A stretch of DNA of 62,776 nt, the filler included, from Basidiobolus meristosporus CBS 931.73 (taxonomy: Eukaryota > Fungi > Basidiobolomycota), in NCBI GenBank assembly GCA_002104905.1. It is 4 parts of 4 records of this genome, joined end to end, with 100 filler letters (N's around TTAATTAATTAA, not from the genome) between each part and the next. Parts side by side here need not be neighbours in the genome. Positions count along the whole stretch, not along the records: positions 1 to 19,298 come from MCFE01001035.1; 3 more parts are not named here. One strand, given 5' to 3'. Shown piece after piece: positions 2 to 19,298 of the stretch (within the stretch, counting starts at the first letter, position 1; each line of letters starts with the position of its first letter). The translations under genes and the position numbers were made by a program. A model generated the notes under the pieces. That model worked only from the letters and a program-made list of their open reading frames with translations. It was not told the origin of the DNA and ran no database searches.

Positions 2-490
2 GCTTCATTGCAAGCAATTTCCGCTACCCCACTTGGTGAATCCCAGGTGGGCTACACCAATGAGCCATGCGTCGAACAACAGGGTGCTTGTTATCAGGAC
101 ACTTCGGCCCCCGGTCAAGAATACCAGCCGTCAACTGAGGAGGGAGATGATTCGGATATGAGTGAGCCAATGCAAACAAGCAAGACTTCGGGTGAGCAGT
201 CAGGATTCTCTGGGTTGCAAGGGTTCGACATTTCAAATCTTCAACCATCCCAAGCCTTGTTGGACAAAATCAATGGCCATTCTTCCAGTAAAGCCAATGC
301 CTTGTCCAACTCAAACCAGTTTGACCAAGCGCAAGTCATTGATCAAACCCTCTACCAGCCCAAGCAGCAACAGCCACAAATTATCATCACTCAGCCAGCA
401 GTGCGTGCACCTAGAGGGGGGTACAAGAAGTATAAGAGATCTGCTCGTCGCCACTTCAAAGTTAGATATTTCAGTGGAAACAGACATTAA
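2..490 (+). CDS. Secreted modular family, class A member 1 (5' end/signal peptide lies upstream of the window)
   Basis: Frame open from base 2 (ASLQAISATPLG, resembling the end of a signal peptide). Motifs CVEQQGACYQ, acidic EEGDDSD, LLDKINGHSSSKANALSNSNQFDQAQVIDQTLYQPKQQQPQ, then a K/R-rich tail. Clear paralogs at 6085, 7309, 9643 and 10220. Confidence 0.8.
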   Translation, partial: ASLQAISATPLGESQVGYTNEPCVEQQGACYQDTSAPGQEYQPSTEEGDDSDMSEPMQTSKTSGEQSGFSGLQGFDISNLQPSQALLDKINGHSSSKANALSNSNQFDQAQVIDQTLYQPKQQQPQIIITQPAVRAPRGGYKKYKRSARRHFKVRYFSGNRH

Positions 491-864
491 GTCTAGTAAA
501 AGTAAATTTACGAAATAAAATGAGCAACATATTACTAGGTATACTGATGATGTACAAGTACTCAAGAATTTGCTGATATGCACACGCAGAAATAGCGTCC
601 CTTATCGTTGTACACAGTGTCATTGTTCGTATTGAAGAGAATTATGGGTAGCGGTGACAGAGCCATGTATATATACACAGAGGCGGTCATTCCAGTGCAT
701 GTGTTTTATATGTTACACGCTTCCTCAATAAAGTCTATAACAGAATGTAAAGCATGCCTAATTTAATAAGACTCGCTTTATGCCCTCAGTTTAACCTTAT
801 TATATAGCCTCCCATGCTATATAGCGTCGTATGTATCTAACTTATTTCTCAGCTATTCTTCAGC

Positions 865-1362
865 ATGCGCTCTACTACCATAGCAGTTATTCTAGGCCTT
901 GCCGCTCTTCAAGTTGCCATTGCTGCCCCAATCGGCTGTTCTTCTCCATGCACTCGCGAGTATAGAAGGGTGCATTATCGCAGCTTACCATGTGCACAGT
1001 ATGCGAGTGATTGCTACCAAAACGCTCGAGTTTTGCCTGTTGTTAAGACGTCGAATGTCCAATCCCCGCTATTGCACCAGGTTTTCACCACGGTGACCAG
1101 AAAGCACGATAACCTGAACATTGCTAATGCCAACAGCAATAAAGGCTTCAATGTCAAGTATCAAGCAGGACCCAGTCTCGAACTGGAGGGTGGGGCCAAT
1201 GCATTAGAATATGCCAAGCAAAAGGGAGCGGAACACTTGGAAGATAGTTCTTTCTCTCCCTACGTCCTGATGCAGCCCACCCAAGATATACAATACACAA
1301 CTCCTGCGGCAGAGATGCAATGCGTTGAAGATTGTCCAGAGCAAAACGTTCAATACAATTAG
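865..1362 (+). CDS. Small secreted Cys-containing protein, class B, related to the cluster family (165 aa)
   Basis: ATG plus hydrophobic signal MRSTTIAVILGLAALQVAIA-API. Contains CAQYASDCYQ, the same C-x6-CYQ motif as class A. A truncated paralog lies at 6953. Confidence 0.8.
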   Translation: MRSTTIAVILGLAALQVAIAAPIGCSSPCTREYRRVHYRSLPCAQYASDCYQNARVLPVVKTSNVQSPLLHQVFTTVTRKHDNLNIANANSNKGFNVKYQAGPSLELEGGANALEYAKQKGAEHLEDSSFSPYVLMQPTQDIQYTTPAAEMQCVEDCPEQNVQYN

Positions 1363-1732
1363 TGCGATGACATGAGCTGAAAATGTAGGTAGTCATCACC
1401 ACGCTACAACCGAAAATTTTCAATCAATAAAATTCAAATGACATTCTTATACTTGTTGTTACTTGTGATCAGCTTTTTACTTGCACACACCTGTGTCATG
1501 ATCAGAGCTGCGGGCATTAATATTAGATATTCGCTTACGTAATAATATACTCACCCTCAGTCTTTAGTAATGCTGCCCTCCACCGAAAAGTTTGATATTA
1601 GAGAGAATGTCTGGTAGGGTTACCGGATTGACTTTGGTAACACAAAGATTCGAGATTGACAGACTGCCCAGTGACTGTTAGCATATTGATATTTCCTCTT
1701 ATCATTTTTGTGCAAGCTAAGACTAAAACAGA

Positions 1733-1814
1733 TGATGAGGGTGGGGTTCGAACCCACGCCTCCGAAGAGACTGCGACCTGAACGCAGCGCCTTAGACCAC
1801 TCGGCCACCTCACC
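1733..1814 (-). tRNA. tRNA-Leu (anticodon CAG), intronless, 82 nt
   Basis: Reverse complement GGTGAGGTGGCCGAGTGGTCTAAGGCGCTGCGTTCAGGTCGCAGTCTCTTCGGAGGCGTGGGTTCGAACCCCACCCTCATCA. Acceptor stem GGTGAGG/CCTCATC, anticodon arm CTGCG-TTCAGGT-CGCAG, long variable arm, GGTTCGAAC T-loop. Confidence 0.97.
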
Positions 1815-2443
1815 AGTTTGAAAACGTGTTAAATCATAAATTTTGCATCCAGGTTGTGGAAAGGTAAACTATCTGAAGTCAATAACATAAGTATGACCTT
1901 GAGATCAATATATTCCACTCGCAATCTTCTATGCTTCCATGTCATATCTGTTACTACCTGTGGTACGTATAACTTGAAAGGGTAACTTACCTTTGAGCCT
2001 ATGACTATCGGCCCTACATATAATAAATAAAAGTAAAGATCAAAGAACTGCCATTGATATTCGAAATGCGGTATCGAGCATTTCTGTCAAGTTTGTATCT
2101 TGCTGTAGTTGCTTATGAAAGTCTAGTGGACCGTGAGTGGTGAATGGTAACAAACATGTACTAAAGGCCTTTGAATTTGTGCAATCGTTAGTCATGATAT
2201 GCACATTATCTATTGAGCATGGCTTAGTAGTGAGGCAAACTACAGAGAATTGAGGCTTGATGCGGGATAAATTAGACTGTGATCTGACTGAATTATGTTG
2301 ATACCACATTTGGCATCCCAGCGCACCGAATTCCTGGGTTCTTCCTGAGGGCATATTTGTTTACAATCACTTCGATCGCTCGCTTTTTACCTTGAAGATT
2401 CTATAAATATAGCACGGACACCATTGCACTCCCCTACTTATTT

Positions 2444-2990
2444 ATGAAACTTCCATTTTCTATCGTTTTATTTATCGCAGAGACGTCACTGCTCCCTTTG
2501 CGGTCATTTGCCAGGTCACAGTATCTGAAAAGAGGAAGCTGAGCTTCAAAGACTCTATAAGGAGGAAAGATTACCGTCTTTGCTGGAGGAGATTTACCCA
2601 ATGCTGGCGCCGATATTGTGAAGGCGTTTGAAAGCAAGTTCCCCGGAGCCATGCTCAACATCACTACTGACTTCAGCAAGTATCACAACCAATTGATTGA
2701 CACGCCATTAGCATCTATTTCTCATATACTGTTCATGAAGAATTCTAACCTTACTGTAGGTACAAGCCAATTGGCTTTAAACACACCTATGCTCCGTACA
2801 AAGACAAGGATGGCTACTACTGGGCTACAAATATATTCTACTTTACAAACTTACTCAGTAACACCATTCATGGTAAACAACGGCCAATTGAAGCCAAGTT
2901 CATTCCTACAAAAGCCTTATTCCCATCTTGGGCACAAACAGGAGCTGTCTTCAAAAAAGTGAAGCATCCAGCAGGTGCCCGGCAACAACG
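2444..2990 (+). pseudogene. Decayed periplasmic-binding-protein-like II (ABC-type Fe3+/thiamine solute-binding family) gene
   Basis: TATA at 2402 and ATG at 2444. Fragments in shifting frames: ELQRLYKE / GKITVFAGGDLPNAGADIVKAFESKFPGAMLNITTDFSKYHNQLID / YKDKDGYYWATNIFYFTN / FPSWAQTGAVFKKVKHPAGAR. These match my recollection of this family's motifs (GGD...AFEKRFPG..LN..VDxSKYH; SWxQTxAI.K.AxHPxxA). Stops, frameshifts and a large internal deletion. Confidence 0.7.
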
Positions 2991-4779
2991 GTTCCTGTAA
3001 TGGGTACCAGCCAGCATCTGAGGAAAGTGGCTCAGTAATGAGTGAAACGATTTGGAATTTTTGGATTAGAATGATAAAGAGTACTCTAGACTTTGGTGAG
3101 AAGCATAACTCTTGGTATTTATTATTATCCCTTAAGCATATATGCATTTATGCGCATTCAAACAATTATAAATGATTCTATTGGAGAACTCGGGTATTAG
3201 GATTCCAATTATCCTCCTCAGATCAAGAACGAAGTTATCCTAGCAACTCTGCCATATATGCTGGCATACTCCTTGTATGCCGTATAGAAAGAAGTAGAGT
3301 TGGATCCTTGTCAAAATAACTAAAGTCTAACAAGTTCCTGCTGATCAAAGTATGGAGTCAGCTCTACCGATTGGCTATCAATTGCAGAGTAGTGGCATGG
3401 CTCTAATAGGGATAAACACCTTTTTGTGCAATTGCTAAGGAACCTCTGTCACTGTACCTATAATAGTACAAATTTAGGGTACAGGCAGCGTGATATACTT
3501 TCTTATTTGTGTTGACACATCCTTTTGGCAACAAACAAATCTATATTTTTCAGAAAGCGGATTGAGAGATTTAACAAGGAAAATATAGTCACTAGCTTTA
3601 ACAGTCCTGTTTTGGTTTTAATATTCCTCAGCACCCAAGAGCACCACCTAAATCTAATACGGAGAAGGCTAGATATTTTACAGGCATAGGCACGTTGTGT
3701 CTTACACAAAATTGAATATTTCCACTTAAATCTTGAATGTGTACAAAGTTGGCTTTTTTATATGAATTTTAGCCATGATTCTAGCCAGGATTATAACTAA
3801 GTCACCTGTCTAAAGCAACTGATGAGGAGCTTTAGGGGATTTCTATGGGAATGTCAAAGCGTCTTTTAATACTGCAAGATACACCTCTAAAATCTCTACA
3901 ATTCGGGCTGGTGGGGCTTTTCCCATGGTTTTATCATTGATTTTAGCAGAACCAGGTATTCCTTTGAGATACTAGGCTAAGAGCTTTCACATCCCTCAAA
4001 TTGCAACGTGTTCACTTCACAATTGGACCAGTGCAAGTGTATATTTCTTTTGAGCCGATTCCAGATGACATTTGACCAATTGACAAGTACTTGGTGGATT
4101 GGTGTAGTATCCTTGAATTCCCTAGAGTGGTACTTCCGTTATAATCCATTGTATCCTGTGAGCAGAACAACACATATTCATATCAATAATATCTGCATTG
4201 TTTGCTGGTCCACAACTCTAGCTACTTTGACAAGTGGCCCACAATCCCCGCAGAAGAAATACTGTTTGAAATAAATCATCACAATAGCTTTAGATCTAAA
4301 TGCGTCTCAATGTCCAAAAGAAGTATTGGCCAAGGGCATGCGCCTCTACATAAAACCATGAAAACCGTAAAACTTTATTTTATCTAAACTTGGTCCACTC
4401 AGAATCATGCGCTTCTCTAACATTTCATCAAACATGCTTTTTCAATTGCTTATAATATGTTAGCCTTGCAAAATACCAAAAATAGTGGTGGCAAGTGTGG
4501 TTACACTATATTTCGTGGCCACCTCTGCATTTGTTAAACTCATTTAACATACCTTTGTTTAACAATCAAGCATCTTGTGCCCCCTTTGACTGAACCTTTG
4601 CAAAAAGTCTGAAAGTGTAATTTATTACTCCGCTATTTCCTACTATGGGATTGATCATGGTTGAGCAGTATATAAATATCCGATCGACTAATACCACTTT
4701 ATCATTACTTACAGGGTCAAGTATATTCACAAGCAAGTTCACTAGCCTGGTTTTATTTCTTTCTTAACTAACTGAATAG

Positions 4780-5127
4780 ATGCCTGGTAGCTATACAAGT
4801 GTCAGGGAATGCTGGTTTCGACGTGGTGGACCGCAGAATCGCCAGCATGAGTTTGGAAAAGTCAGTCACCCATCAGGATTGGCAATCTTTAATCATATCC
4901 ATGGTGTGGAAAGTGGAGAGATTGAAATTCCGGTTCTTCTTGCGGGTGTTGAAGAGCATGACCTTGATGAAATCTGCAGTGACCAGACTAGTGCCTACTT
5001 TGTCTTAGATACAAAGCTTAGAATTGAGCGCATACTAAGTGGCCAAGATGAGATAAGGCTTTGGCTGCAAAACAATGTCAATCGTGCATTCATCATCCTT
5101 TGCCTAGGTGATACTGCCATGGAGTAG
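4780..5127 (+). CDS. Hypothetical 115-aa ORF, no recognisable family
   Basis: ATG-started ORF with a TATATAAAT element about 110 bp upstream. No motif recognised; may be spurious or a remnant. Confidence 0.25.
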   Translation: MPGSYTSVRECWFRRGGPQNRQHEFGKVSHPSGLAIFNHIHGVESGEIEIPVLLAGVEEHDLDEICSDQTSAYFVLDTKLRIERILSGQDEIRLWLQNNVNRAFIILCLGDTAME

Positions 5128-6084
5128 ACAAAGTAGTAGCAATGTCTCTTTAGGTGCTCATGCGTTGTTGGAATACTTATGCCGAGTAAATTCAGCGAAA
5201 CTATCCAAATACTTCTTCCAAATGTAGAATTCTGATATGTGATGGCCAATATTGTATAGTCTTATATTCAGGACAATGGCATACCACTGGTCGTTTAATG
5301 CTCTAATAACCAAATTACTGCTCTGCTATAAAAAAGCATACCTGCACAGGAGCAAGCACAATACTTGCTTAGGCGTATCTCAGCCAAGTCATTATTTTTA
5401 ACATGCCATACTGTAAGTCCAAATTGGTTAAAATGGATTCCTTTCTAAAGCTTAGTTTGAATAAAAGGATTAAATGTTACCTCTTTGAAAGTTAACAATG
5501 CCTCACCATTAGACTGTTTCTTATTTTTTGTTCCGGATGAGCATTCAGGGAATCAATGCTCTTGTTATGTTTGTTGAGTATATGATATGGATTGCCATGA
5601 TTAAGTTCATTTCTTAGTTTTTGATGGACATTTCTAGATATTATGAGAATGCTCGTTTCCTTGTATAGTGCGCATTTCACTATAAAGAGATCAGCAAGCA
5701 AATTATCAGTGATGATTGTGATCAGAGAGTTGTGGCGTTAGGTCACCATTGCTGACCCATTCGACTGTTCCTCCGCTTGAGTTTGAATGTATAGAAGAGT
5801 TTATTATTGTAGCTGTCCATGATCAAAACGTCCAGGTTTTGCCTGTGGTTAAGATGCCCAATCTCTACTATTGTGCCAGGTTTTCTCAACCATGACCAGA
5901 AAGCACGTGACCTGTTCTTACATAGATTCTGTAGTATCTCTCTTTGCCGATATTTTGGGTTTGAATATATGGATATATAAGCCATTGGTCACTATGCAGA
6001 ACTAGAAATAGGATTAACCATGACAAATTATGCCAACTACTTTTATAAAGTGCACCGGTGACTACCAGTCCCTGCTTGTTTAGA

Positions 6085-6538
6085 ATATAACTTGCTATCA
6101 CTCTACTGGCCTTATCCATACAGGCAATACCTGTTGCAGCAGAGTGTCAACTTGTGTGGGGAGCAAGTAAGCCCCTGTTATCAAGAGGCTCAATCACCCA
6201 AATAGGACTATCAGCCAGAACAGAATGATCATGATGAGGAAGATTTTGATACAGATGAGGGCGAAAGTAACATTTGAGACTCAATGGAAGATATTACCAC
6301 CCAACCAAGGTCATCCTATGGTCCAGAGTCCAATATAGCTGATATGCAGCCAAGACAAGTGAACGCTCACTCCTCTAATTAATCTGATGCGCTAACAAAC
6401 TGCAATCCGTTTGACCAAGCCCTCAGGCAGCCTAAGCAGCAGCAACCCCAGATTATCATCACCCGGCCAGCAACTTGTATCCATGGTGGTAACAGATCAT
6501 GTTCAGTAGTAATATATACTTACGACTATTTCAGTTGA
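6085..6538 (+). pseudogene. Class A secreted-family pseudogene
   Basis: Aligns with 7309-7875 but ATG CAA is mutated to ATA TAA, with more stops and deletions. Retains CGEQVSPCYQ, an acidic tract and PKQQQPQIIITRPATC. Shares the upstream block ACAAATTATGCCAACTAC..TATAAAG. Confidence 0.85.
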
Positions 6539-6952
6539 AATCACTTTATACTGTTCCCGATGCCTATTTCTATGGAGTCTCACCATGGGAACAGGTTTAG
6601 GATTGATCTATATGGAGGTTGAATACCCCCAAATGCGCCGCCATTTCACCAAGCTGGATCATAGAGATATGTATGTCATTGGTCAATGCTTAGCTGAGTT
6701 GGTGATAGTGAGAACTCATTATAACTTGGGCAGTCCTATATGTTGCTACTACCTAAGTGACTCCAGACGTGGTTGGCGACTGCATTGAAATCATTCAAAC
6801 GAATATCAAAAACGTCCTTGTTACCTATCATGTATCTACCACAGAAATTAGAAAGCTAATCAGCTATCAATCAATATCCAAGCCTTAATATGTAGCCAAA
6901 TACAATATACACTACGCAATGTATAAAGCAAACTACTCGGTTATTCTTTGAG

Positions 6953-7051
6953 GTGCGTGCAACTACTATTATGATGATTTTGGCCCTTGTATTACTTCAG
7001 GCCACCATTGCAGCCCCAGTCCCATGTTTCTCTTCATGTTCCCGAAAGTAA
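6953..7051 (+). pseudogene. Truncated class B paralog (of 865-1362)
   Basis: GTG-RATTIMMILALVLLQATIAAPVPCFSSCSRK* aligns with MRSTTIAVILGLAALQVAIAAPIGCSSPCTRE. TATAAAG about 30 bp upstream; homology ends after about 33 codons. Confidence 0.75.
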
Positions 7052-7308
7052 AGTAAAAAGGCGAGACCACTTGTGATTATAAAATCAAGTATGATTTCCT
7101 ACACGTATTTATCTTATTTATGAGCTAAGTATTGTTCTTACATAGATGACATAATATCTCGCTTTGTCAATATTAAGGGATATCATCTATGGATATATGA
7201 GCCATTAGCCGATACTTTGCCTAGCTAAATATAGGATTTAGCATAACAAATTATGCCAACTACGGTTATAAAGCGAGCTTGTGGCCGGTGCTACACTGCT
7301 TATCAAGA

Positions 7309-7875
7309 ATGCAACTCACTATCGCTTTACTGGCCTTCTACATTGCCTCCATCCAGGTAATCCATGTTGCAGCTGATGAAGCTTCTCAGGCCAGCTACAG
7401 TGACAATTCGTGTGTGGAGCAAGTAGGCCCTTGCTACCAAGAAGCTCAATCCCCCGGATATGATTATCAGCCAGAACAGGATGATGGTGACGAGGAAGAT
7501 TATGACATGGATGAGGGGGGAGGCGAAGGTGAAGGCGGAGACTTAATGTAAAACACTACCACCCAGCCAGAGTCATCCTATAGTTCAGAGTCGGATATTT
7601 ATGACTTCAATATAGCTGATATACAGCCACGACAGACCTTGTTGGGCAAAGTAAATGCTCACTCATCCAACAGCGCGGACGCACTCTCTCAATCCAATCA
7701 GTTTGACCAGGCCCAGGTCATCGACCAAACCCTCTACCAGCCCAAGCAGCAACAACCCCAAATTAACATCACTCAGCCAGCAACCTGTGGCTATGGTGGT
7801 AACAGAAAGAAGACAAGAGATCAGCCCACAAGTACCTTAAGAACAGATACTTGGATTACTATTACAAATAAATAA
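7309..7875 (+). pseudogene. Class A secreted-family gene interrupted by one in-frame TAA (7549-7551)
   Basis: MQLTIALLAFYIASIQVIHVAA signal, CVEQVGPCYQ, acidic tract. ORFs 7279-7551 and 7639-7875 are in the same frame, separated only by TAA where the 6085 paralog has GAA. Confidence 0.8.
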
Positions 7876-8740
7876 CCCATTTGAAGTCACTGAAACATCA
7901 GCAGCCTTGGTGTGCAAACTGCTATACCACAGGCATTAACAATGGTTGCTACTAGCCTTGTTCCAAAACCGCAACTTTAATTGAGTTTTTGCATATAAAT
8001 TCTTGATTAGCACTATTTTTTAACTTTTTGAATTTCCAGTAAGAACACTTCTTTTCCCCCTAATATCGCTCAAAGTAACAGTCTGCCCATCTACAGAGCC
8101 AGTAGATAAACTCAGGGAAGTGTTGGAGAGTGTCGTTGAGGAAGCAAAAAGCGATATGACTCATACTACGAGTTGTCAAGCGAGTGCTCGAAGCGTGCAC
8201 ACAGGAATGGCACTGTTCTTACGTAGATCATTATTTCATTGTCAGTTTGCAGAAATATCTTTCATCATAAATAATACCTTCGATTTTTTATCCCCAAAAT
8301 TGTGGGTCTAATTATGAAAATTTTCCACACTTCTTCTGTGGTAAATATAGCGCTACACCCTCTAGGTGATAATTGCGCTTGAAGTAGCCTAATAAAGCTT
8401 ACATACTCTTTCTTTCAACCATGAAGAAATAGGGAATTTACTAGAAATAATATGAATAGTATGATGCCAAGTGAGCAATACAGCAATTAATGGGCACATA
8501 TACCCGGGCTCAAATCTCACCCTCCCATAAATATTCACCTCATATGATGGCTGATAAGCAGGGAGGCATAGTCCGTCTGTAATGATGGTGATGGAGCAGA
8601 ACATATATACGTATATACCTCTTTTCTCACTAAAAGCCTGCGGAAGGGATGAATATTTACATAATGCATATCTCTCCATGTACTCTGGTTTCCCTATTTT
8701 ATTGTTAACAGCGTAGGAATCTCAGTGCTGCATGTTTACG

Positions 8741-9080
8741 TTAATATCTGTAGCGGTGTCGTTCACAATGACTACACGATGGTTGATCATAATCATCACT
8801 TTCGTATTTGTCTTCGTCCTCATCTGGGATATATGTAGGCGTAGATGGTTGGAACAACGTCTGATCCACCAACTGCACCTGGTCATATTGATTTGAGTTG
8901 GAGAGAGCTTGGACATCCTGCGCAGAGTTAGCCTGGATGCTGTCCAGCAACGGAGAGGCATCTGGGACATCCGATGGGTAGTCTGTCGATGAATATGATT
9001 CAAGGTATGGTGTCTGGTTGTTGTATGTATTGATGGGCCAAGAATACTATGGTGGATAGAATGTAGGTATTGTAATGCAT
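8741..9080 (-). pseudogene. Class C secreted-family gene with a frameshift just after the signal peptide
   Basis: ATG at 9080 gives MHYNTYILSTIVFLA; an adjacent frame gives PINTYNNQ...PLLDSIQANSAQDVQALSNSNQYDQVQLVDQTLFQP...DEDEDKYESDDYDQPSCSHCERHRYRY*. Collinear with 10220-10600, including the 5' UTR. Confidence 0.75.
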
Positions 9081-9642
9081 TTTGGTGCTTAGTGATACTA
9101 GACAATTACTTTTATCCACACTTTTATACATGATATACATGATAGGCATGATTCATCAATGATCATCAGCTACCCAAGCACAGTTTACTAAATTATCTAG
9201 CCAAAGTTAATCATCATTTTATTCAGAACTAAATGAAGAATCGATTATCATTTCACATACATTTCACATTCAATAGTGAAACCAGTGTTATTGATCAGCG
9301 ACCAGGTTAACCAATCATTGGGTTGCATGACGAAAAATAAATAAGCATCAATTGACCAATTGGCATTTAGGATTGGCATTCAATATTGGGTTGGTACTAG
9401 CTATTATCAATCCTCAAGTCTTCAACTAGGCGAGACCACTCGTGATTATAAAATCAGTCTATAAGTATGATTTACACTATACGTGTTAGCGTATTTATTT
9501 CTCGTATCTATGAGCTAAGTATTGTTTTTACATGGATTACATAATATCTAGCTTTGTCAATATTACGGGATATATGAGCCATTAGTCGATACTTTGCTGA
9601 GTTAGATATAGGATTTACTGTTATGCAGTTCTAGAGTTCTAA

Positions 9643-9891
9643 CCAGAACAGGATGAGGGCGAAGGTGAAGGTGAAGGCAGAGACTGAATGGACGGCACTA
9701 CCACTCAGCTAGAGTCACGTGTTCCTGACTTCAAGACAAAGTCAAAGCTCACTCATCCGAGTCACTCATCCAACAACGCGGATGCACCCTCTCAGTCCAA
9801 TCAGTTTGACCAAACCCTCTACCAGCAAAGCAGCAACAATCCCAAATTACCATCACTCAGCCAGAAACCGCTAGCTATGGTGGTAACATAA
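9643..9891 (+). pseudogene. Class A secreted-family fragment (5' part deleted)
   Basis: PEQDEGEGEGEG, HSSNNADAPSQSNQFDQTLYQQ and a QK-PLAMVVT-like 3' end align with 7470-7810. Follows the same upstream block as 7060-7250. Confidence 0.7.
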
Positions 9892-10219
9892 TCAAGTACA
9901 ATCACAAGTACTTCAGGGTCAGATATTCCGGCAGAAATAGATACTTCAGAAATAAATTCCACTTTATACTGTTGCCAATACCTATATCTATGGCGTAGCA
10001 CGATGGGGAGCAGGACAAGGCTGTCCAGTTTGCAAGATAATAAGCCAGCTACGATTAGTGGACAGTAGATGAATTGGATAATGATGGAAATAAACAATAA
10101 ATCATAGTAGCTGGGGAAGTTGTTGGCTGGCTGTTACTGAACGCTCTGTATTAGCACGCAGTAGGCACATAAGAATTTATTTATGACAGAATGAAAAGGA
10201 TTGATTATATTTGTTTGCA

Positions 10220-10600
10220 TTAATATCTGCGTCTACGGTTGCGTCGTTGACAACGGTTGCACGACGGTGAATCGTTGTCGTCGCCTTCATCCAAAGCGAC
10301 AGTTTGCACGTATGACGGCACAGATTCAGGTTGGTACAATGTCTGATCTACCTGTTGCACCTGGTCGTATTGGTTCTGGTTAGAAAGAGCCTGAGCATCT
10401 TGCGCGGAATTAGCCTGGACATTATCCAGCAAGGGATAGGTGTCTAGAGAGTATGTTGGAATAGATGATATCGCAGGTTCAGCATCTGTAAAGTCGGGTG
10501 TCTGTTCTAGTTGTTGGTCATAGTACGCCTCAATGGGTGATGCATAGGTTAAACTGGCTAACAGTAGTAAGGTGAATGGAATGTGGATAATACAAGGCAT
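10220..10600 (-). CDS. Secreted modular family, class C, intact (126 aa)
   Basis: Signal MPCIIHIPFTLLLLASLTYA-SPI, core LLDNVQANSAQDAQALSNQNQYDQVQQVDQTLYQP, acidic DEGDDND, tail SCNRCQRRNRRRRY*. Confidence 0.88.
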   Translation of the reverse strand: MPCIIHIPFTLLLLASLTYASPIEAYYDQQLEQTPDFTDAEPAISSIPTYSLDTYPLLDNVQANSAQDAQALSNQNQYDQVQQVDQTLYQPESVPSYVQTVALDEGDDNDSPSCNRCQRRNRRRRY

Positions 10601-12354
10601 ATTGGTTCTTGGTGATGTACAAGATCACAAATATTGGATTATATACACAGCCATCATGATTCATAACTGGTTAGGTAATAGTTAATCAGAGTGAATAAAG
10701 TTAATCACTTTCAATTAGAGTTATTGGGGATTTGTTCATTTAATATCATGTAAACCAATCATATTGATACAACAGCAATCAGTATATTGAGCAGCAATAT
10801 TCTATTATTGGTAATATCTGGATATACTTGATATGTCAATGCTTTCCTGAGTTGGGTAATTATACAGTGATGGCAAGAATGCTACTTGCTGTTGCTTGGC
10901 TGTTTCTATATGTTGCTACTATCCAAGTGACTCCTGGTTACATTTTGGTCATTTGAATGGATATCAAAATTGCTCTTATTACCTATTGCTCATTTATCAC
11001 AGCTATCTATTACAATGTGAATACATCAACATAGTTTTACTCACCTATATCCAAGCCTGATATATATCATGTGATGACAATTGTACTGATCAGTTGACTG
11101 GGCCCATGTAAGACACTCTAAAGTTTGTAAATAAACTGCCTTGATTCATCTATAAGCAACCAGAAGTAGCCATGTTACCTCTGTATTGCAACTGGAGCCT
11201 TCATTCAATTGCCACCATTGGTACCACATGCTGATATAAAAAACAGTGTATTTGCAACATGAAAAAGCTTTCAATGGTCTGTTCAATCATAGGGTTGGTA
11301 AGGAGAGCATGCAAAGTTGTGTACAAAATAAATCATGTACAGTAGTATTTACAGACCAACTAATGGGGAAAGTAGCACATATTATCTGTAGTTGTGGTGG
11401 CTGCCTACAATGAGTGTTTACTATAAGCCTTGTTTACAATAGAATTGGATGCATCAGACACCCCAGCTAATGAAAAAAAGAAAATAAAAATCAATTAGCC
11501 AGTTAGCATTTAGGATTGACATATAGTATTAGGTTAGTACTGGCAGATATCAATCCTAGAGTCTTCAACTAGGCAAGACCGGGAGTTATTATAGAATCAG
11601 GCTATAACAACAATTCTGTGCTTATTGTATTTATAAGTAAAGTATTGTTGTTACATTATCATTTATTAGGAAAGGCTGTGAATACATAAATGTTTATCTT
11701 GAAATCACTCTATGCTGTGGGCAGCAGAATCAAGCTCACTTACCATCTGGACATTATGGGCATTATTTTGGCAAGTGTGCTCCTAAAGGTTAATACATGG
11801 TAGAAAGATAAAATCATATCAGCAAAATAAATTTGACAATGAGTTGTTAGCTTTCCCTGCTTATTACCATTCATGTACCTATATAGGCTTCACCTTGCTA
11901 ACTTCAGTGTTTATCCTCAAAATATCATCAATCCTCCTTTATGGTGTTCTACATGACTGCTCCATGACAGCCTCCAAATGGTTTATACATTATACTGCAT
12001 TAAGATGCCATTCAATCCCAATGATACCACATGCATCAAAATCAACCAGCAGCACCAAGCTCCAGTAGTTGCCACTTGGCTGTAAAAGACTCTAGCAAGC
12101 ATCTTGGCTTCCAGCAGAGGACCAGAAAATTGACAAAATATATTATTTCTTAGCCTATCCTCATGCTAGTTCTCACATATTTGTCTTACCTACATTTGGC
12201 ATGCACATATTAGACAATGATCCTGAAGCACAGTAGTGAATCCAAGAGAAGGGCATGGTGTGGATTAGGATCCAAACATTTGTCATCCAACTGCAAAAAC
12301 CCATTATAAAATGCGATACAATAAGTTCAGGTTGGTATTCAGTACAATACAACA

Positions 12355-13083
12355 ATGCCTGCCAATCTTCCACGCAGAGCACTACTAGCCATCACCAGCT
12401 ATAACAAGCCCTTCTACGCCAATGGTAGTAAGACTGGACTCTTCTATACAGAAGCGTTGCACCCGTTCAAAGCACTTGTCCAGGCCGGGTTTGAGGTTGA
12501 CATCGCCTCCGAGACTGGCACTTACGGAGTGGATGAGCACTCCCTGTCGAAAGACTTTCTCTCCGAGGATGATCAAAAGGTGCTGAACGACCCAGAGCAT
12601 CCATTCAATGTCAAACTGAACTCACAGCTTCACAAGGCGTCGGACCTCAACCCTGCTGATTATGGTCTATTATTTGCTTCTGCCGGGCACGCAATCTTGT
12701 GGGATTACCCTACGGCTCGTGGCCTGCAGCATATTGCCGAGGACATATACAAGCGTGGAGGGGTTGTTTCAGCTGTGTGTCATGGGCCAGCCATACTTTC
12801 TGCCATTGTTGACAGCACCACAGGCAAATCCATCATCGCTGGCAAGAAGGTCACCGGGTTCACCACGGAGGGTGAGGTGATGCTTAGCCTGCTTGATATT
12901 ATCAAATCAGCCAATGTGGCTACAATTGAAGAAGGAGCGGCCGCTGTTGGAGCCAAGTATGTGGCACCCCCCACTCCGTTTGCCGATTTTACACAAACTG
13001 ACGGCCGAGTTGTCACTGGAGCTAGCCCAGCAAGCGCACGATCCACCGCTGAGGATGCCATCAAGGTGTTCTCGAGCCTCTAA
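12355..13083 (+). CDS. HSP31: DJ-1/PfpI family Hsp31-like glutathione-independent glyoxalase (242 aa, intronless)
   Basis: GSKTGLFYTEALHP (catalytic Glu), ASAGHA, VSAVCHGP nucleophile elbow, KKVTGFT and DGRVVTGASPASA; full length. Confidence 0.92.
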   Translation: MPANLPRRALLAITSYNKPFYANGSKTGLFYTEALHPFKALVQAGFEVDIASETGTYGVDEHSLSKDFLSEDDQKVLNDPEHPFNVKLNSQLHKASDLNPADYGLLFASAGHAILWDYPTARGLQHIAEDIYKRGGVVSAVCHGPAILSAIVDSTTGKSIIAGKKVTGFTTEGEVMLSLLDIIKSANVATIEEGAAAVGAKYVAPPTPFADFTQTDGRVVTGASPASARSTAEDAIKVFSSL

Positions 13084-13929
13084 AGGGCAACATCTGTGTA
13101 TAGAAATAGATAGGCATTCAATAAATTCCTTAATTAACTCTCAATACTGTCTACATTGGTACTTCATGCATCTGGTGATGGTAAAACTATTGGATGCTAT
13201 GGAGTACCAAAAAAAATCCTCAGGCTTCTTGTTGCCGCGTTGTACTTTTGCATTTTCTACAATGCAGAGAGGACTAGCAGAAATGTCATGTGTATTTGGA
13301 GAGCTGAGAAACTGTGAAAGTTAAAGACTTTTCCCAGTCTTTCTAAAGGATTTTATAGAGATGACTCTAGCAAAGGAGCCACAAGACATCATCAATGCTA
13401 TCATTATGATTGATAAGTTAGCAGTGTTTGGAGTCAATGGATATGACCAGTTGTGGTGTAAAGCACAACATACTCTCACACTTGTAGCGTGCTTTTATCT
13501 TAAGCAGCCTGTTTGTCAGACTTTTGATACCGGTATGTAGTTTGCCAACTACTGTTCTCTGAATTTCACTACTTGGAGAGTGTCACTGTTGATCATTTTA
13601 TCTTGCCTGACCTGTCTACTGGCCGAAGCATATTGAAATATATTTTTCTTGCTTGCTACTTCTACCATTAGGATTACTCTTGACCACATCCGCGCACTTG
13701 CTTCCACACCAATTGTGCAAGAGAACAACACTGCAGAGATGAAGAATCCATATGATGGCTTTCCTGTTTGTAATCCCGCATGGTTCTCTAGGGAGGTGGC
13801 ATCTGGACAAGCCCCTACAGCCAAAAGGCCATTGAGGATAGCAACGTAGCCAATGGTGCTTATCACATATCCAAAGTTTAGGCAGTGTGCAAACATTGAG
13901 AATAATGGAAGCCATCTATTACTTTTATG

Positions 13930-14190
13930 GCATGATTTCACATGGCCCTGGCTCTCAATATAACACAATCATCCCTGCTGTCTCCGCTCTGATTGACACC
14001 GCCATTGCCAATACCTTCAAAATCACAGCTTCCAGCCCCGTTTCCGTTATTGCCACCATTGCTAACCCCTCCGCTCCCACCATCACTACCACCGCTACTG
14101 TTGCCAGTATCAAAAGCACCACTACCACAACTACCATTCCCATTATCACCACTGCTACCGCTATTTCCATTGCCAGCGCCGCCACCACCT
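13930..14190 (-). pseudogene. Possible remnant of a Gly/Ser/Asn-rich linker-containing gene
   Basis: Minus frame reads GGGGAGNGNSGSSGDNGNGSCGSG...GGSDGGSGGVSNGGNNGNGAGSC with no start and stops on both sides; lies about 150 bp from an LTR insertion. Confidence 0.3.
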
Positions 14191-14342
14191 AATTTTAGCC
14201 ATCAAGCCCTTTTCCTCTGCATTATTTAAGCAGGCTCTGTTACATGGCTACGTACAATTGACCAATGGATGGCTGAAACTAATTTTATGCAATATATGAT
14301 ACCTGTTGCTTGACGAGCATGAAGTTAGTGTCACAAATAAAT

Positions 14343-17300
14343 TGTTGTAAGAGTCTTGGAGATATTGGAAGTGATTGGGAGAACAAGTAGATTATGTGGT
14401 TTTCACTTAATGATTTATTGAATGTAAAAGTAGTATTTATACTTTTACCTGGTCTTGGCACTACAAACATGTAGAATAGGTTAAGGAAGGTCCCAAGAAC
14501 ATGTGTGCAAAGCTTGGGGCTGTTTGGACAACTTTGAGAATTTTCATGTTCTGGGTACCTGGTATTTTGGTGAAAATATTCTAAGTAAATCCCGACAAGG
14601 AATTTGGTCAGTATTTTCTAGGATTTGAAGGTAATGATCTAAGTGACTAAGTTAGGTGAATATTTAGGTGGAAATACAAATTTTTACAACACTCCCACTC
14701 AGCTAAATGTTCATACTGACTAGTCCTAATTTTGACCTAAGATATTCAAACTTGTCTCTAGCTAATGGCTTGGTAAATATGTCTGCAATCATTTCATCTG
14801 TAGGACAGTAAACTAAGCTAACCAAGTTACTCTCTATAGCTTCACGTATGAAATGATGTCTAATATCTATGTGCTTGGTTCTAGCATGAAAAGTTGGATT
14901 TCTACCTAATTGTATACATCCTTGATTATCTTGAAATAAAGTAATAGGCGTTTTTTGACATAGGCCTAAATCTGTAAAGAGCTTTCTTAACCACATTGCT
15001 TCTTTTGTAGCTTCACAGGCTGCCATATACTCTGCCTCTGTAGTAGAAAGTGCTATGGTTGGTTGCTTTCTTGAATTCCATGAAATTGCTCCTTTACAGT
15101 AAAGAAAGGTGTATCCTGTGGTGGATCTTCTGTCTTCAAAATTTTGTCCCCAATCAGCATCAGAGTATCCCACAAGATCCTGTTCTGAATCCTTATAAGT
15201 GTATTTTAAGCAGATATCAGCAGTTCCTTTTAGGTATCTAGAAATCCGCTTAACTGCTGCAATATGATCAGATCCCTAATTCTGATTATGTTGGCTGAAA
15301 ACTCCCACTGAATATGAGATATCTGGACGTGTTCCAAGCATGATATACATCAGACTGCCGACCATAGATTGATAAGGAAAGTCAGGGCTTTCAGATGGCA
15401 CCAAGTTCTCTTGATTTGGTTGAGTTTTGACCAAGTTAAGGTTTGTCTCCATTGGGGTAGCTGCCGGTTTACAGTCTTCCATTTTGTACTTCTTTAGTAT
15501 ATCTTGAATATACTTGGATTGGCTTAGGGTAATAGTCTGGGTACTTCTGTCTATGGAGAACTTAATCCCTAAGTAGTAACTGAGTTCTCCTAGATCGGAC
15601 ATCTTGAACTCCTTAGATAGGCTGGATTTAGTCTCTTCCAATGTTTCTAGGTTATTGGTGGCTATAATAAGATCATCCACATATAGAGCTAATAGAACTG
15701 GATTTGCTCTATCTGGCTTATAGTATATACTATAGTCAGCATTACTCCTTTTGAAACTCAAAGATTCCAAATAAGAATCTATCTTGCAATTCCAGGCTCT
15801 CGGTGATTGTTTGAGACCATATAGTGACTTTTTAAGCTTGCAGACCAAATGGGGGTTATCTTGGTCAACAAACCCATCAGGCTGGTCCATATACACGTCC
15901 TCATCAAGTTCTCCATTCAAAAATGCAGTTTTTACATCCATTTGATGAATAAAAAACTTATATTTGGCTGCAATAGCCAATATTAATCTGATGGAATTAA
16001 ACTTGGCTACCAGTGCAAAGGTCTCAGTATAGTCAAGTCCTTTTGTTTGAGAGTATCCTTTGGCTACAAGTCTTGCTTTGTATCTTTCAATTGTACCATC
16101 AGCCTTGTACTTTTGTCTTGAAGACCCATCTGCATCCAATTGATTTTTGGTTGATTGGTAATTTGAATAAGTCCCAAGTTTGATTTTCCATCAGGGCCTG
16201 ATATTCCTCAGTCATTGCAGATCTCCAAAACTTTGTCTGAGGGCTATTTAGGGCCTCTTTTACAGTCTGGGGCTCATCAATATGGACTGAATAGGCATAG
16301 GCTAAGTTTGTACCCTCATTAATATAGTAATTTGGGCTATTTCTTGTCCAATTTGATCTCCGGGCATTTGATACTGGAATGATCACTTCTGAGATATTCC
16401 TGGGCACTGATTCTGGCTGAACCACGGTTGTAGAGTCCTCTGGAGTGAAAAAATTTTCATTTTTTGCTCTGATTCAATCCTGACAATTGGTTGACTTGAG
16501 ATCAAATTTTTGTCATCATCTGATGTCATTTTTTGTGAAAATTTTGAATTTTCATCAAACAACACATCCCTGGACTTGATCAGCTTCTTTGCTTTGGTAT
16601 TGTAGAGTCTGTATGCCTTACTCTCATTGCAGTAGCCCAAAAATATGCATTTTACACTTTTTGGCTCAAATTTTGACTGATTTCCGGCCAGTTTTTTGGC
16701 ATATGCTGTACACCCAAATATTCTTAGATGTTCTGCACTTGGTCTGTATCCATACCATGCTTCAAATGGAGTAGAATCACAAAGTATTCTGTTATAACTC
16801 CTATTTTTAAGGTATACAGCAGTAGGCAAGCTGATTCCGCCCAAAAATCATAGGATAATTTTTGATCATGGATCATAGATCTTGCCATATCAATTATTGA
16901 TCTGTTAGCTCGTTCTGCTACTCCATTTTGCTGTGGGGAGTATGGTACAGTAGTCTCTTGCTTTATCCCATGAATTTTGCAGAAGTGGATGAAGAGTTTT
17001 GAGGTATATTCTCCACCATTGTCAGAGCGTATTTTCTTGATTTTTTCACCAGTTTCTCTCTCCACCATGGCTTTAAACTCCCTGAACTTAGACAGAGCTT
17101 CTTCCTTTCTCTCCATGAAGTAGACCCATGTGTATCTTGTATAATCATCAATAAAAGTGATTAAATACTTCATCCCGCCTAAGGATAAATTTTGCATAGG
17201 TCCACACAGATCTGAGTGAATTAGATCTAATTTTTTCTTAGTTTTGATTAACCCAGAGCTCTTGAACGGTTGTCTGGCTTGTTTCCCATATATGCAGGCT

Positions 17301-19030
17301 TCACAGTGCTCCAAATTAGCTGGGGGATCAATTTTCACTCCAGAAATTAGCTGATCTTTGATCATTTTACGCAAATAATCAAAATTGATGTGTCCAAATC
17401 TCCTGTGCCAAAGCATTGGTGTTTCTTCATTTAAGTTACTTATATTGGCTTCCAGATATGATGGAATATAAGTCAACTTGTATAGATTCTGATCTCTGAT
17501 GCCCAAAGCAATATGAGCACCATTTTGATCAGTGATCCTGCATCCAGAATTGTCAAAACTGAAACTGAGTCCTTCTGCTGTGGCCTTGCTTACAGAGAGT
17601 AGGTTCTTGGCTATTTCTGGTACATAGAGTACTTCTTTAAAGGTCAGTGTATGGCTTCCTTCACTGCTTCTAAGGTTTACTTGGATAGTTCCTTCTCCCA
17701 CTGCATCAAGTGTTCTATTGTCACCCATGAAAACCTTCTTAATTGGAATTTCTTGATATTGGGTAAAAAGTTCTTTTTGGTGTGTAAAGTGTTGAGAAGC
17801 TCCAGAGTCAATATACCACGTCTGAGAATCCTTGTTTGTGGTCATATTTAGTGCAGATATGAATAGTCTATCTTCAGTTGTTGCAGCATTTCCATATTCA
17901 GGCTTCTTTTGCTGATAATCTCTCTTTTTGAGATCACCGGTCTGATGTGTGTCCTTTCCTTTTGCAGTAGTTGCAAAATAGGTTGCTGTTGCCTTTGTAG
18001 GGTCTTGGGTACCTCCTTTGTTGGTTATCATTGCTTATTAAAGCATTTTCTTCTTCCTTCTTATTGGCGCTTGATTTTCTTAATTCTTCATCCAGGAGCC
18101 TTCCATATACGTAATTTAAGGTCAAATCTTCAGTTCTGGACTCTAGGGCTGATACAAGGCCCTGAAACTTGTCTGTCAGGCTATTCAGGATGGTAACTAT
18201 CACATCCTCATCAGTAGTTGGTACGCCCACAGATTCCATCTCATCTACCAGCAGGGTAATTCTGTTAATTAGATTTTTCATTTCTTCTCCTGGCAGCATC
18301 TTTGTAGTAAAGAATTTTCTTCTCAGATACATTTTCTTGGCAGCTGAACATGACTGGTAGGTGTCTTCTAATGCCTTCCAGGCATTCTTTGCCGTTTTTG
18401 CTCTTGAGCATTGAATTAGCAATTTGTCCTTGACATTAAGGCAAATGCAGTTAAAGGCACTTTGTTCTTTCTTCTGGTACTTTAAGGCTTCCTCTCCCAC
18501 ATTTTTAGGAGGGCATTCTTCTCCCATGACAATATCCCAAAGGCCTCTTTCTTGTAGCAGCATCTTCATCTTCACCTTCCACACTTGGTAGTTAGATCCA
18601 TCCAACTTTTCAGCAGAGGGAAAAATTCCAGTAATAGCAGTAGTAGACATTGCAGAGAGTGACAGCTTGGGGCTCATAACCTGTTGTAAGAGTCTTGGAG
18701 ATATTGGAAGTGATTGGGAGAACAAGTAGATTATGTGGTTTTCACTTAATGATTTATTGAATGTAAAAGTAGTATTTATACTTTTACCTGGTCTTGGCAT
18801 TACAAACACGTAGAATAGGTTAAGGAAGGTCCCAAGAACATGTGTGCAAAGTTTGGGGCTGTTTGGACAACTTTGAGAATTTTCATGTTCTGGGTACCTG
18901 GTATTTTGGTGAAAATATTCTAAGTAAATCCCAACAAGGAATTTGGTCAGTATTCTCTAGGATTTGAAGGTGATGATCTAAGTGACTAAGTTAGGTGAAT
19001 ATTTAGGTGGAAATACAAATTTTTACAACA
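14343..19030 (-). mobile_element. Full-length but mutated Ty1/copia LTR retrotransposon, TSD TAAAT
   Basis: TG..CA LTRs at 14343-14691 (3') and 18682-19030 (5'), 349 bp each, 6 transitions apart. TAAAT on both flanks; PBS and PPT present. Gag-PR-IN-RT-RNaseH order is split over several ORFs (17934-18809, 16724-18031, 16383-16844, 16099-16425, 15276-16139, 14703-15173). Confidence 0.96.
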
Positions 19031-19298
19031 TAAATAAATTGCTACTTGAATGGCATTGAGAAAGCAATAGAAGTATAGCAGCTTTGTGAGAGAACCCCCC
19101 ATCCAGTCATGCAACTTTCCTTCCTCTTGCTTGTTGCGGCAATAATATCTTTATGAATCTCAGGTATTTCACATCAACAACCTATGTGCTGAGCAGTTGG
19201 GAGCTTGTTATCAGGAGGAAGTGGCTTCCAACACAGAATACAAATCCTCAACTGAGAATGAAGGCAACTTAGATATGAGTGATAGAATTATAATAAGT

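What the first reader, a model, noticed from the sequence alone, without database searches (positions are those of the whole stretch)
2..10600. Tandem cluster of an unrecognised modular secreted-protein family undergoing birth and death
Seen: at least 8 copies in 10.6 kb (3 intact: 2-490, 865-1362, 10220-10600; 5 damaged: 6085, 6953, 7309, 8741, 9643). They reuse the same modules: signal peptide, C-x6-CYQ, D/E tract, LL[DG]x[IV]..S..A.ALS..NQ[FY]DQ.Q.[VI]DQTL[YF]QP and a basic tail. I do not recognise the core as a named domain. Inference: a lineage-specific, fast-turnover secreted repertoire (spore coat, adhesive, or effector/peptide precursor), lying next to a TE-rich compartment.
Basis: partly seen in the sequence, partly recalled or inferred. 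Interest (0 to 1): 0.75.

Follow-up and report, generated by a model that had tools for sequence, protein, structure and literature searches.

The report
Basidiobolus-only secreted disordered protein gene array
This scaffold of the gut-associated fungus Basidiobolus meristosporus carries a tandem array, partly decayed, of three co-amplified kinds of small, apparently secreted and unstructured proteins that occur only in this genus, run to roughly 180 predicted proteins, and have no known function.

Summary
The window is a 19,298-bp scaffold of Basidiobolus meristosporus CBS 931.73.

The "family" is three co-clustered gene types:
- **Type A:** signal peptide, C-x6-CYQ loop, acidic spacer, Q/N-rich core, QIIITQ, aromatic-basic tail.
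- **Type C:** signal peptide, the same core, acidic tract, CxxC plus an Arg/Tyr tail.
- **Type B (865-1362):** shares only the N-terminal module with A, not the core.

Three copies are open and seven are broken. The public gene model K493DRAFT_364207 hides a stop codon inside a predicted intron.

An exhaustive profile search of 1.84 billion representatives found relatives only in B. meristosporus and B. ranarum, plus one unnamed ENA contig. There is no Pfam or PDB match, and AlphaFold2 predicts disorder. B. ranarum has single-signal-peptide proteins that join the B core to the A/C core and tail, so the modules probably work together. Paralogues show dN/dS of about 0.16.

Function is untested. 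My best guess is a self-associating extracellular coat, matrix or adhesive material (about 0.35). The main rival is precursors of cationic peptides (about 0.25). The family is undescribed, but it belongs to a familiar kind: a lineage-restricted, amplified family of small secreted proteins.

The parts
2..490 (+). Type A gene, open reading frame running off the left edge (signal peptide partly missing)
   Evidence: 94% identical to P0022 over 162 aa. Carries the C-x6-CYQ loop, acidic tract, Q/N core, QIIITQ and basic tail.
865..1362 (+). Type B gene, intact (165 aa). A partner protein, not a core-bearing member.
   Evidence: 96% identical to P0058. Shares only the N-terminal module with A. Its core is unrelated to the A/C core.
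5742..5906 (+). Type B fragment (residues ~17-81), no start codon
   Evidence: tblastn E 5e-6 to 9e-6. DNA repeats D11 and D14.
5913..6050 (+). Conserved type A upstream region with a TATAAAG box. Repeated at 7106-7273 and 9496-9617.
   Evidence: Direct repeats D7, D8, D10 and D12 at 78-90% identity. Alignment.
6073..6550 (+). Type A pseudogene (4 stops, a frameshift, core deletions)
6953..7048 (+). Type B remnant: signal peptide plus 12 codons, GTG at the start, stop at 7049-7051
7309..7875 (+). Type A pseudogene: in-frame stop at 7549-7551 and tail frameshift after ~7812. Annotated publicly as K493DRAFT_364207 with an intron that removes the stop.
   Evidence: In the paralogue P0030 the stretch around the stop is ordinary coding sequence.
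8747..9046 (-). Type C pseudogene (no signal peptide, three upstream stops, decayed tail)
9634..9944 (+). Type A pseudogene (stops, frame change, core deletion)
10220..10600 (-). Type C gene, intact (126 aa)
   Evidence: 50-61% identical to 18 named B. meristosporus proteins, E down to 5e-28.
19109..19283 (+). Type A N-terminal fragment, frameshifted and cut by the right edge

Best explanation
What it is (confidence about 0.9): a tandem array of a Basidiobolus-restricted, heavily amplified set of three co-clustered genes for small proteins. Each has an N-terminal signal peptide and is otherwise predicted to be disordered. The array evolves by local duplication and pseudogenisation.

The proteins are built from short, strongly conserved modules joined by freely varying spacers. 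The modules are a C-x6-C loop, the B core (TTVTRKHDNLN...KYQAGPS), the Q/N-rich A/C core (ALSNSNQ[FY]DQ.Q.[VI]DQTLYQP), a beta-prone QIIITQ, and an aromatic-basic tail.

How it most likely works (inferred; the confidence below applies to this part): the products are secreted and self-associate outside the cell into a coat, matrix or adhesive material on hyphae or spores. In this reading the conserved Q/N core, the QIIITQ element and the Tyr/Phe plus Arg/Lys tails act as 'stickers'. The acidic block pairs with the basic tail (about -11 against +11 in A, -9 against +8 in C), and type B acts as a partner component. High gene dosage would supply bulk product.
For: Shown by tool results:
- Copies and their breaks.
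- Source organism: P0037, the JGI model of 7309-7875, sits on a contig of 19,298 bp of B. meristosporus CBS 931.73.
- A and C share a 47-column core: hhalign probability 98.5%, E 3e-15.
- Restriction to the genus: 28 representative hits among 1.84 billion proteins, each named Basidiobolus by look-up or by the word searches.
- Copy number: about 69 type A, 35 type C and 85 type B distinct sequences, from the member counts.
- Clustering: consecutive accessions show A, B and C genes interleaved on more than a dozen scaffolds.
- Module fusion: B. ranarum proteins with a single hydrophobic N-terminal segment carry the B core, then the A/C core, then the tail. This is a Rosetta-stone type link between the modules.
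- Disorder: AlphaFold2 gives mean pLDDT 52.8 for A and 39.0 for B. In A the signal-peptide helix is the only element. B also has one low-confidence helix at 106-119.
- Charge blocks and Q/N content.
- Constraint: the core and tail are nearly invariant across the two species while the spacers change length and composition (acidic, Met-rich, His/Lys repeats). dN/dS is 0.15-0.17.

Inferred from these: near-identical high-copy arrays and sticker-spacer design fit a bulk extracellular material better than an arms-race molecule.
Against: - There is no expression, secretion or localisation evidence. The signal peptide is judged only from hydrophobicity, the AF2 helix and UniRef's automatic 'Secreted protein' names.
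- Disorder was predicted from shallow alignments (16-17 sequences).
- Nothing tests self-association.
- The layout of signal peptide, acidic block, dibasic site and cationic C-terminus is also the classical layout of antimicrobial-peptide precursors.
- Many copies are pseudogenes, so dosage need not be selected.
- Other Entomophthoromycotina with sticky conidia lack the family.
Confidence: 0.35

Rival explanations
1. Precursors of cationic peptides. After signal-peptide removal, a Kex2-like protease cuts at the conserved dibasic site. In A this is KKYKR|S or KKYKK|F, and in C it is SCKR|C. The cut releases a 14-16 residue Arg/Lys/Tyr-rich C-terminal peptide, antimicrobial or signalling. Until then the adjacent acidic block neutralises the peptide. 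The conserved core acts as a pro-domain, in the manner of cathelicidin or Hydra arminin.
For: - The acidic block sits directly before, or near, the basic tail, with roughly matching charge.
- The dibasic site at the start of the tail is conserved in both species.
- A and C share the core but have different tails, like a conserved pro-region with alternative cargo.
- Tandem arrays with birth and death are seen here.
- The fungus lives among gut bacteria (PMC7466969, PMC10964425).
- There is a weak sub-threshold Pfam hit of type B to Myticin-prepro.
Against: - The best-conserved part is a non-cationic 40-residue core with no flanking dibasic sites.
- The tails are polybasic throughout and nearly invariant between species, unlike typically diversifying AMPs.
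- The tail has no amphipathic helix and no fold is predicted.
- The Myticin hit is below Pfam's cut-off (19.5 against 28.5 bits).
- Type B and the long B. ranarum forms are not explained by this model.
Confidence: 0.25
2. Host- or microbe-directed effectors. These would be secreted disordered proteins whose conserved linear motifs bind a target in the animal gut, in insects or in competing microbes. The basic tail would serve for uptake, or for binding to nucleic acid or glycosaminoglycan.
For: Genus-restricted small secreted proteins in amplified clusters beside a transposon are the usual genomic signature of effector families. The KKYKR and poly-Arg tails resemble uptake or nuclear-targeting signals (inference only).
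Against: - The functional modules are strongly conserved and dN/dS is low, so there is no sign of diversifying selection.
- Many copies are near-identical.
- Basidiobolus is mainly a saprobe and gut commensal.
Confidence: 0.12
3. Not functional genes. The ORFs would be passengers of a repeated DNA segment that spreads and decays, and the gene models would be annotation artefacts.
For: - Seven of ten copies in the window are broken.
- The public annotation papers over a stop with an intron, and it fuses neighbouring genes.
- Both scaffold ends fall inside copies.
Against: - Open copies persist in two species with invariant cores and tails.
- dN/dS is about 0.16 despite saturated dS.
- Upstream regions containing a TATA box are conserved.
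- Signal-peptide-like N-termini are retained in all three types.
Confidence: 0.08

Closest known systems
Lineage-restricted, tandemly amplified small secreted protein (SSP) families of fungi, as catalogued in bulk for zygomycetes (PMC9391592)
   Same: Signal peptide, under 300 aa, no Pfam domain, restricted to one lineage, clustered and amplified, with birth and death.
   Different: - It consists of three co-amplified types built from shared modules.
- The linear motifs are near-invariant rather than fast-diverging.
- Disorder is predicted throughout.
- The family is not individually described in any paper I could find.
Cationic antimicrobial-peptide precursors with an anionic pro-region (Hydra arminins, cathelicidins, amphibian skin peptide precursors, mussel myticin). 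From general knowledge.
   Same: Signal peptide, acidic block, dibasic site, cationic C-terminus. Taxonomically restricted multigene arrays.
   Different: - No sequence relationship was found. Myticin-prepro is sub-threshold and matches only type B.
- An extra, highly conserved Q/N core is present.
- The tails are conserved rather than diversified.
- No activity is known.
Extracellular self-assembling proteins and adhesives: Ustilago repellents, Candida Als amyloid segments, mussel and sandcastle-worm glue proteins. From general knowledge.
   Same: Secreted, disordered, with Tyr plus Lys/Arg-rich segments, opposite-charge blocks, a short beta-prone segment flanked by prolines, multi-component, and high gene dosage.
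   Different: - The resemblance is compositional only. There is no homology and no tested assembly.
- There is no GPI signal and there are no Kex2-delimited repeats.
Kex2-processed repeat proteins (KEPs). B. meristosporus has the most of any fungus surveyed, 43 (PMC7329392).
   Same: Secreted, with dibasic sites, and expanded in the same genome.
   Different: The proteins here have one copy of each module and a single conserved dibasic site, not tandem core peptides separated by KR sites.

Membership tests
Basidiobolus A/C core family (defined here) | Q/N-rich core ALS[ND][SQ]NQ[FY][DE]Q.Q..DQT.YQ, preceded by LLD.V | tested here: met
   Present in 2-490, 7309-7875, 10220-10600 and 8747-9046, and degraded in 6073-6550 and 9634-9944. 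A and C profiles align at probability 98.5%. Absent from 865-1362.
Basidiobolus A/C core family (defined here) | N-terminal signal peptide | tested here: inconclusive
   A single N-terminal hydrophobic segment, the AF2 helix at residues 8-22 and UniRef 'Secreted protein' names all point that way. No SignalP run was possible and there is no experiment.
Pfam PF10690 Myticin-prepro | Score at or above the gathering cut-off of 28.5 bits | tested here: not met
   19.5 bits, E 0.0012, for type B only. 3 of 16 B-type members match weakly.
CBM1 / Eng1 carbohydrate-binding / C2H2 / SCP (automatic UniRef names on some members) | Match to the corresponding Pfam domain | tested here: not met
   No such Pfam hit at E up to 1 in any of the 16 B-type members, nor in the window proteins. 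The precomputed Pfam column is empty for all hits.
Kex2-processed repeat proteins (KEPs) | Several tandem core peptides separated by KR/RR sites | tested here: not met
   The alignments show one core and one conserved dibasic site per protein.
Hydrophobins | Eight-cysteine pattern | tested here: not met
   A and C have two cysteines, and B has four at the N-terminus plus two to six at the C-terminus. There is no Pfam hit.
Anionic-propiece cationic peptide precursors (functional analogy, not homology) | Acidic block next to a cationic C-terminus, with a dibasic site at the junction | tested here: met
   Charge blocks are -11/+11 in A and -9/+8 in C, and the KR or KK site is conserved.
Anionic-propiece cationic peptide precursors (functional analogy, not homology) | Released peptide with antimicrobial or signalling activity | not testable with these tools
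   Needs peptide mass spectrometry and activity assays.

The most novel reading that the evidence does not exclude
The three gene types encode the components of a genus-specific, multi-component extracellular material, for example the glue of the capilliconidial haptor or a spore coat. It would assemble by charge-block coacervation and Q/N/Tyr/Arg sticker contacts. If so, this would be a protein material system invented de novo in Basidiobolus, encoded by about 180 predicted proteins, roughly 1% of its gene models.
Probability: 0.15. Interest if true: 0.75.

Novelty: new variant of a known kind. Interest (0 to 1): 0.5.

Why it matters
Basidiobolus is an ecologically odd fungus. It is a herptile-gut symbiont dispersed by insects, and an occasional pathogen of people and animals. 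Little is known about the molecules it uses at its surfaces.

A genus-only set of about 180 predicted secreted proteins, with invariant short motifs and partner modules that are separate in one species and fused in another, is a concrete and testable candidate. It could underlie a lineage-specific surface material or a peptide arsenal.

The finding also flags annotation problems that inflate or distort the secretome counts used in comparative studies: stops hidden in introns, and neighbouring genes fused into one model.

Tried and rejected
- **Known families:** Pfam scans of all window proteins and of the B-type alignment gave only sub-threshold noise (Myticin-prepro, HPIH, Evasin).
- **Solved structures:** PDB profile searches found nothing below E 0.5.
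- **ESM Atlas:** no usable hit for A. For C, only leads below 0.9 to arthropod low-complexity secreted proteins.
- **Structure prediction:** AlphaFold2 for A and B produced no fold, so I ran no fold search, since it would be meaningless.
- **B core as a diverged copy of the A/C core:** rejected (hhalign probability 0.2%).
- **C tail related to the B N-terminal Cys-basic segment:** not supported (probability 4.7%).
- **Genomic context of paralogues:** I used accession order and contig lengths as a proxy.
- **Literature:** seven searches and four papers read gave no description of the family.
- **Not run:** metagenome and viral contig scans, because the 15-billion-protein collections already covered those sources.
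- **Handling of broken copies:** they were only described. In the dN/dS script stops were read as X and those columns dropped.
Full report
**Source and setting**

The window is eukaryotic, about 40% GC. It is a whole 19,298-bp scaffold of Basidiobolus meristosporus CBS 931.73. The word search returned P0037 (K493DRAFT_364207) on a contig of exactly that length, and P0037 is the public model of the copy at 7309-7875.

Other features on the scaffold:
- a tRNA-Leu(CAG) at 1731-1815;
- an intact DJ-1/PfpI gene at 12355-13083;
- a degenerate Ty1/copia element on the minus strand, bounded by 300-bp LTRs that are 97% identical, at 14337-14636 and 18676-18975.

**Checking the observation**

The loci fall into three types.

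*Type A (+ strand):*
- 2-490 is open to the left edge and 94% identical to P0022.
- 6073-6550 has four stops, a frameshift and core deletions.
- 7309-7875 has a stop at 7549-7551 and a tail frameshift.
- 9634-9944 has stops, a frame change and a core deletion.
- 19109-19283 is frameshifted and cut by the right edge.

*Type C (- strand):*
- 10220-10600 is intact.
- 8747-9046 has lost its signal peptide and has three upstream stops.

*Type B (+ strand):*
- 865-1362 is intact.
- 5742-5906 and 6953-7048 are fragments.

The three internal type A copies share about 170 bp of upstream sequence with a TATAAAG box.

The public model P0037 removes the stop at 7549-7551 with a predicted intron. In the paralogue P0030 the same stretch is ordinary coding sequence. 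That intron is therefore an annotation device, and the locus is a pseudogene.

**How the types are related**

Profile-profile comparison gives the following results.
- A and C share a 47-column core: probability 98.5%, E 3e-15.
- A and B share only the signal peptide and the C-x6-C(Y)Q loop: probability 66%, E 6e-5.
- The B core is unrelated to the A/C core: probability 0.2%.

In B. meristosporus the three types sit next to each other on many scaffolds. Consecutive GenBank accessions alternate B and C, or A and B, on contigs of 40,599, 64,266, 55,953, 103,448, 167,007, 155,026, 22,312 and 14,885 bp, among others. Some public models fuse an A gene to the following B gene (P0026, P0056, P0057).

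In B. ranarum there are proteins with a single N-terminal hydrophobic segment that carry, in order:
- the B core, the A/C core, an acidic tract and a C-type tail (P0079, P0080, P0090); or
- the C-x6-C loop, the B core, a long repetitive spacer, the A core, a QVIIP element and an A-type tail (P0085, P0086, P0088).

Modules that are separate genes in one species and one polypeptide in another are probably functionally coupled. I could not inspect the DNA of those B. ranarum models.

**Distribution**

Word-based searches with A, B and C returned only B. meristosporus and B. ranarum proteins, all "hypothetical", with no precomputed Pfam domain. The one exception is an unnamed ENA protein on a 774-bp contig.

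Because the claim rests on the absence of relatives, I ran the exhaustive profile search with the type A alignment against 1.84 billion representatives. It gave 28 hits at E up to 1e-3. I looked up 16 of them, and the other 12 already carried names from the word searches. All are Basidiobolus.

Summing cluster member counts gives roughly 69 A, 35 C and 85 B distinct predicted sequences in B. meristosporus. Fused and fragmentary models are included, so this is approximate. It is on the order of 1% of the annotated genes, if my recollection of about 16,000 genes is right. I did not check that figure here.

**Nature of the proteins**

There is no Pfam family above threshold and no PDB relative. 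The language-model searches gave no useful look-alike.

AlphaFold2 with the family alignments predicts disorder for A (mean pLDDT 52.8) and B (39.0). In A the signal-peptide helix is the only element. B also has one low-confidence helix at residues 106-119. The alignments are shallow, so this is weak evidence.

Mature A is a charge diblock:
- an acidic spacer (net -11; -14 counting the Cys-loop segment before it);
- a 40-residue Q/N-rich core;
- KQQQPQIIITQP;
- a 28-residue tail of net +11 with regularly spaced Tyr/Phe.

Mature C has the core, then an acidic tract (-9), then a CxxC Arg/Tyr tail (+8).

Between the two species the core and tails are nearly invariant. The spacers change freely in length and composition: acidic, Met-rich, or His/Lys repeats.

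Codon comparison of window paralogues gives dN/dS of 0.15-0.17 with saturated dS. Stops were read as X and those columns dropped. The subtypes are therefore old and evolved under constraint, even though individual copies are dying. Paralogues elsewhere in the genome that are 94-96% identical show recent duplication.

**Mechanism**

Nothing here tests function, so this part is inference.

I favour an extracellular self-associating material: a coat, matrix or adhesive (about 0.35). The reasons are:
- the invariant stickers joined by free spacers;
- the opposite-charge blocks;
- the Q/N/Tyr/Arg chemistry;
- the multi-component co-amplification and the fusions in B. ranarum;
- the high dosage of near-identical copies;
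- the lack of diversifying change.

The main rival is a precursor of cationic peptides (about 0.25). The order of signal peptide, acidic block, conserved dibasic site and cationic C-terminus is the classical precursor layout, and the fungus lives among gut bacteria (PMC7466969, PMC10964425). Against it, the best-conserved part is a non-cationic core without flanking cleavage sites, and the tails are conserved rather than diversified.

An effector role (about 0.12) and non-functional repeat passengers (about 0.08) are less likely, for the reasons given in their entries.

**Comparison with what is known**

The closest known kind is the lineage-restricted amplified SSP family. Such families have been counted in bulk for zygomycetes without describing this one (PMC9391592).

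B. meristosporus is also the fungus richest in Kex2-processed repeat proteins (PMC7329392). The present proteins lack the repeats that define that class.

Seven literature searches found no description of the family.

**Limits**

I therefore could not read paralogous loci or earlier notes.
- No SignalP, RNA-seq or proteomics data were available.
- Basidiobolus can infect people and animals.

**Verdict**

The family is undescribed and genus-restricted, a new variant of a familiar kind. Interest is moderate (0.5) and would rise to about 0.75 if a material or adhesive role were shown.

Noticed in passing
window 7309-7875 (stop at 7549-7551): The public gene model K493DRAFT_364207 (P0037) splices out an in-frame stop with a predicted intron. 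In the paralogue P0030 the same stretch is coding sequence, so the annotated 'secreted protein' is a pseudogene.
   Followed up: yes
P0026, P0056, P0057, P0047 (B. meristosporus, other scaffolds): These public models fuse a type A gene to the neighbouring type B gene. Some retain remnants of the second signal peptide. This distorts secretome and domain counts.
   Followed up: partly
window 14337-18975 (-): Ty1/copia retrotransposon with 300-bp LTRs that are 97% identical. The gag, integrase and RT ORFs are split by stops and frameshifts. It lies about 130 bp from the type A fragment at 19109.
   Followed up: partly
window 12355-13083 (+): Intact 242-aa DJ-1/PfpI family gene (Pfam E 1.6e-9), the only ordinary housekeeping-type gene on the scaffold.
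   Followed up: no
window 1731-1815 (-): tRNA-Leu(CAG) gene between the first A-B pair and the decayed part of the array.
   Followed up: no
window 1400-5700 and 10700-12300: Long stretches with no ORF over 115 aa and no Pfam hit for the largest ORFs. What they contain is unexplained (possibly old repeats).
   Followed up: partly
P0085 (B. ranarum, 361 aa): The spacer between the B core and the A core holds six tandem PKKHHT[WS]EK units and MEMP[TM]MEKT repeats. P0081 and P0084 have Met/Asp-rich (MDMDMD) spacers. Spacer composition is highly plastic.
   Followed up: no
P0014 (ENA, 774-bp contig): The only family member not from a named Basidiobolus genome. The contig is mRNA-sized and the ORF reads through 27 codons upstream of the conserved Met, which hints at a transcript. 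The source is unknown.
   Followed up: partly
window 13887-14229: Low-complexity Thr/Ala/Pro-coding run (ACC/ACT-rich) just outside the copia LTR. Not examined.
   Followed up: no
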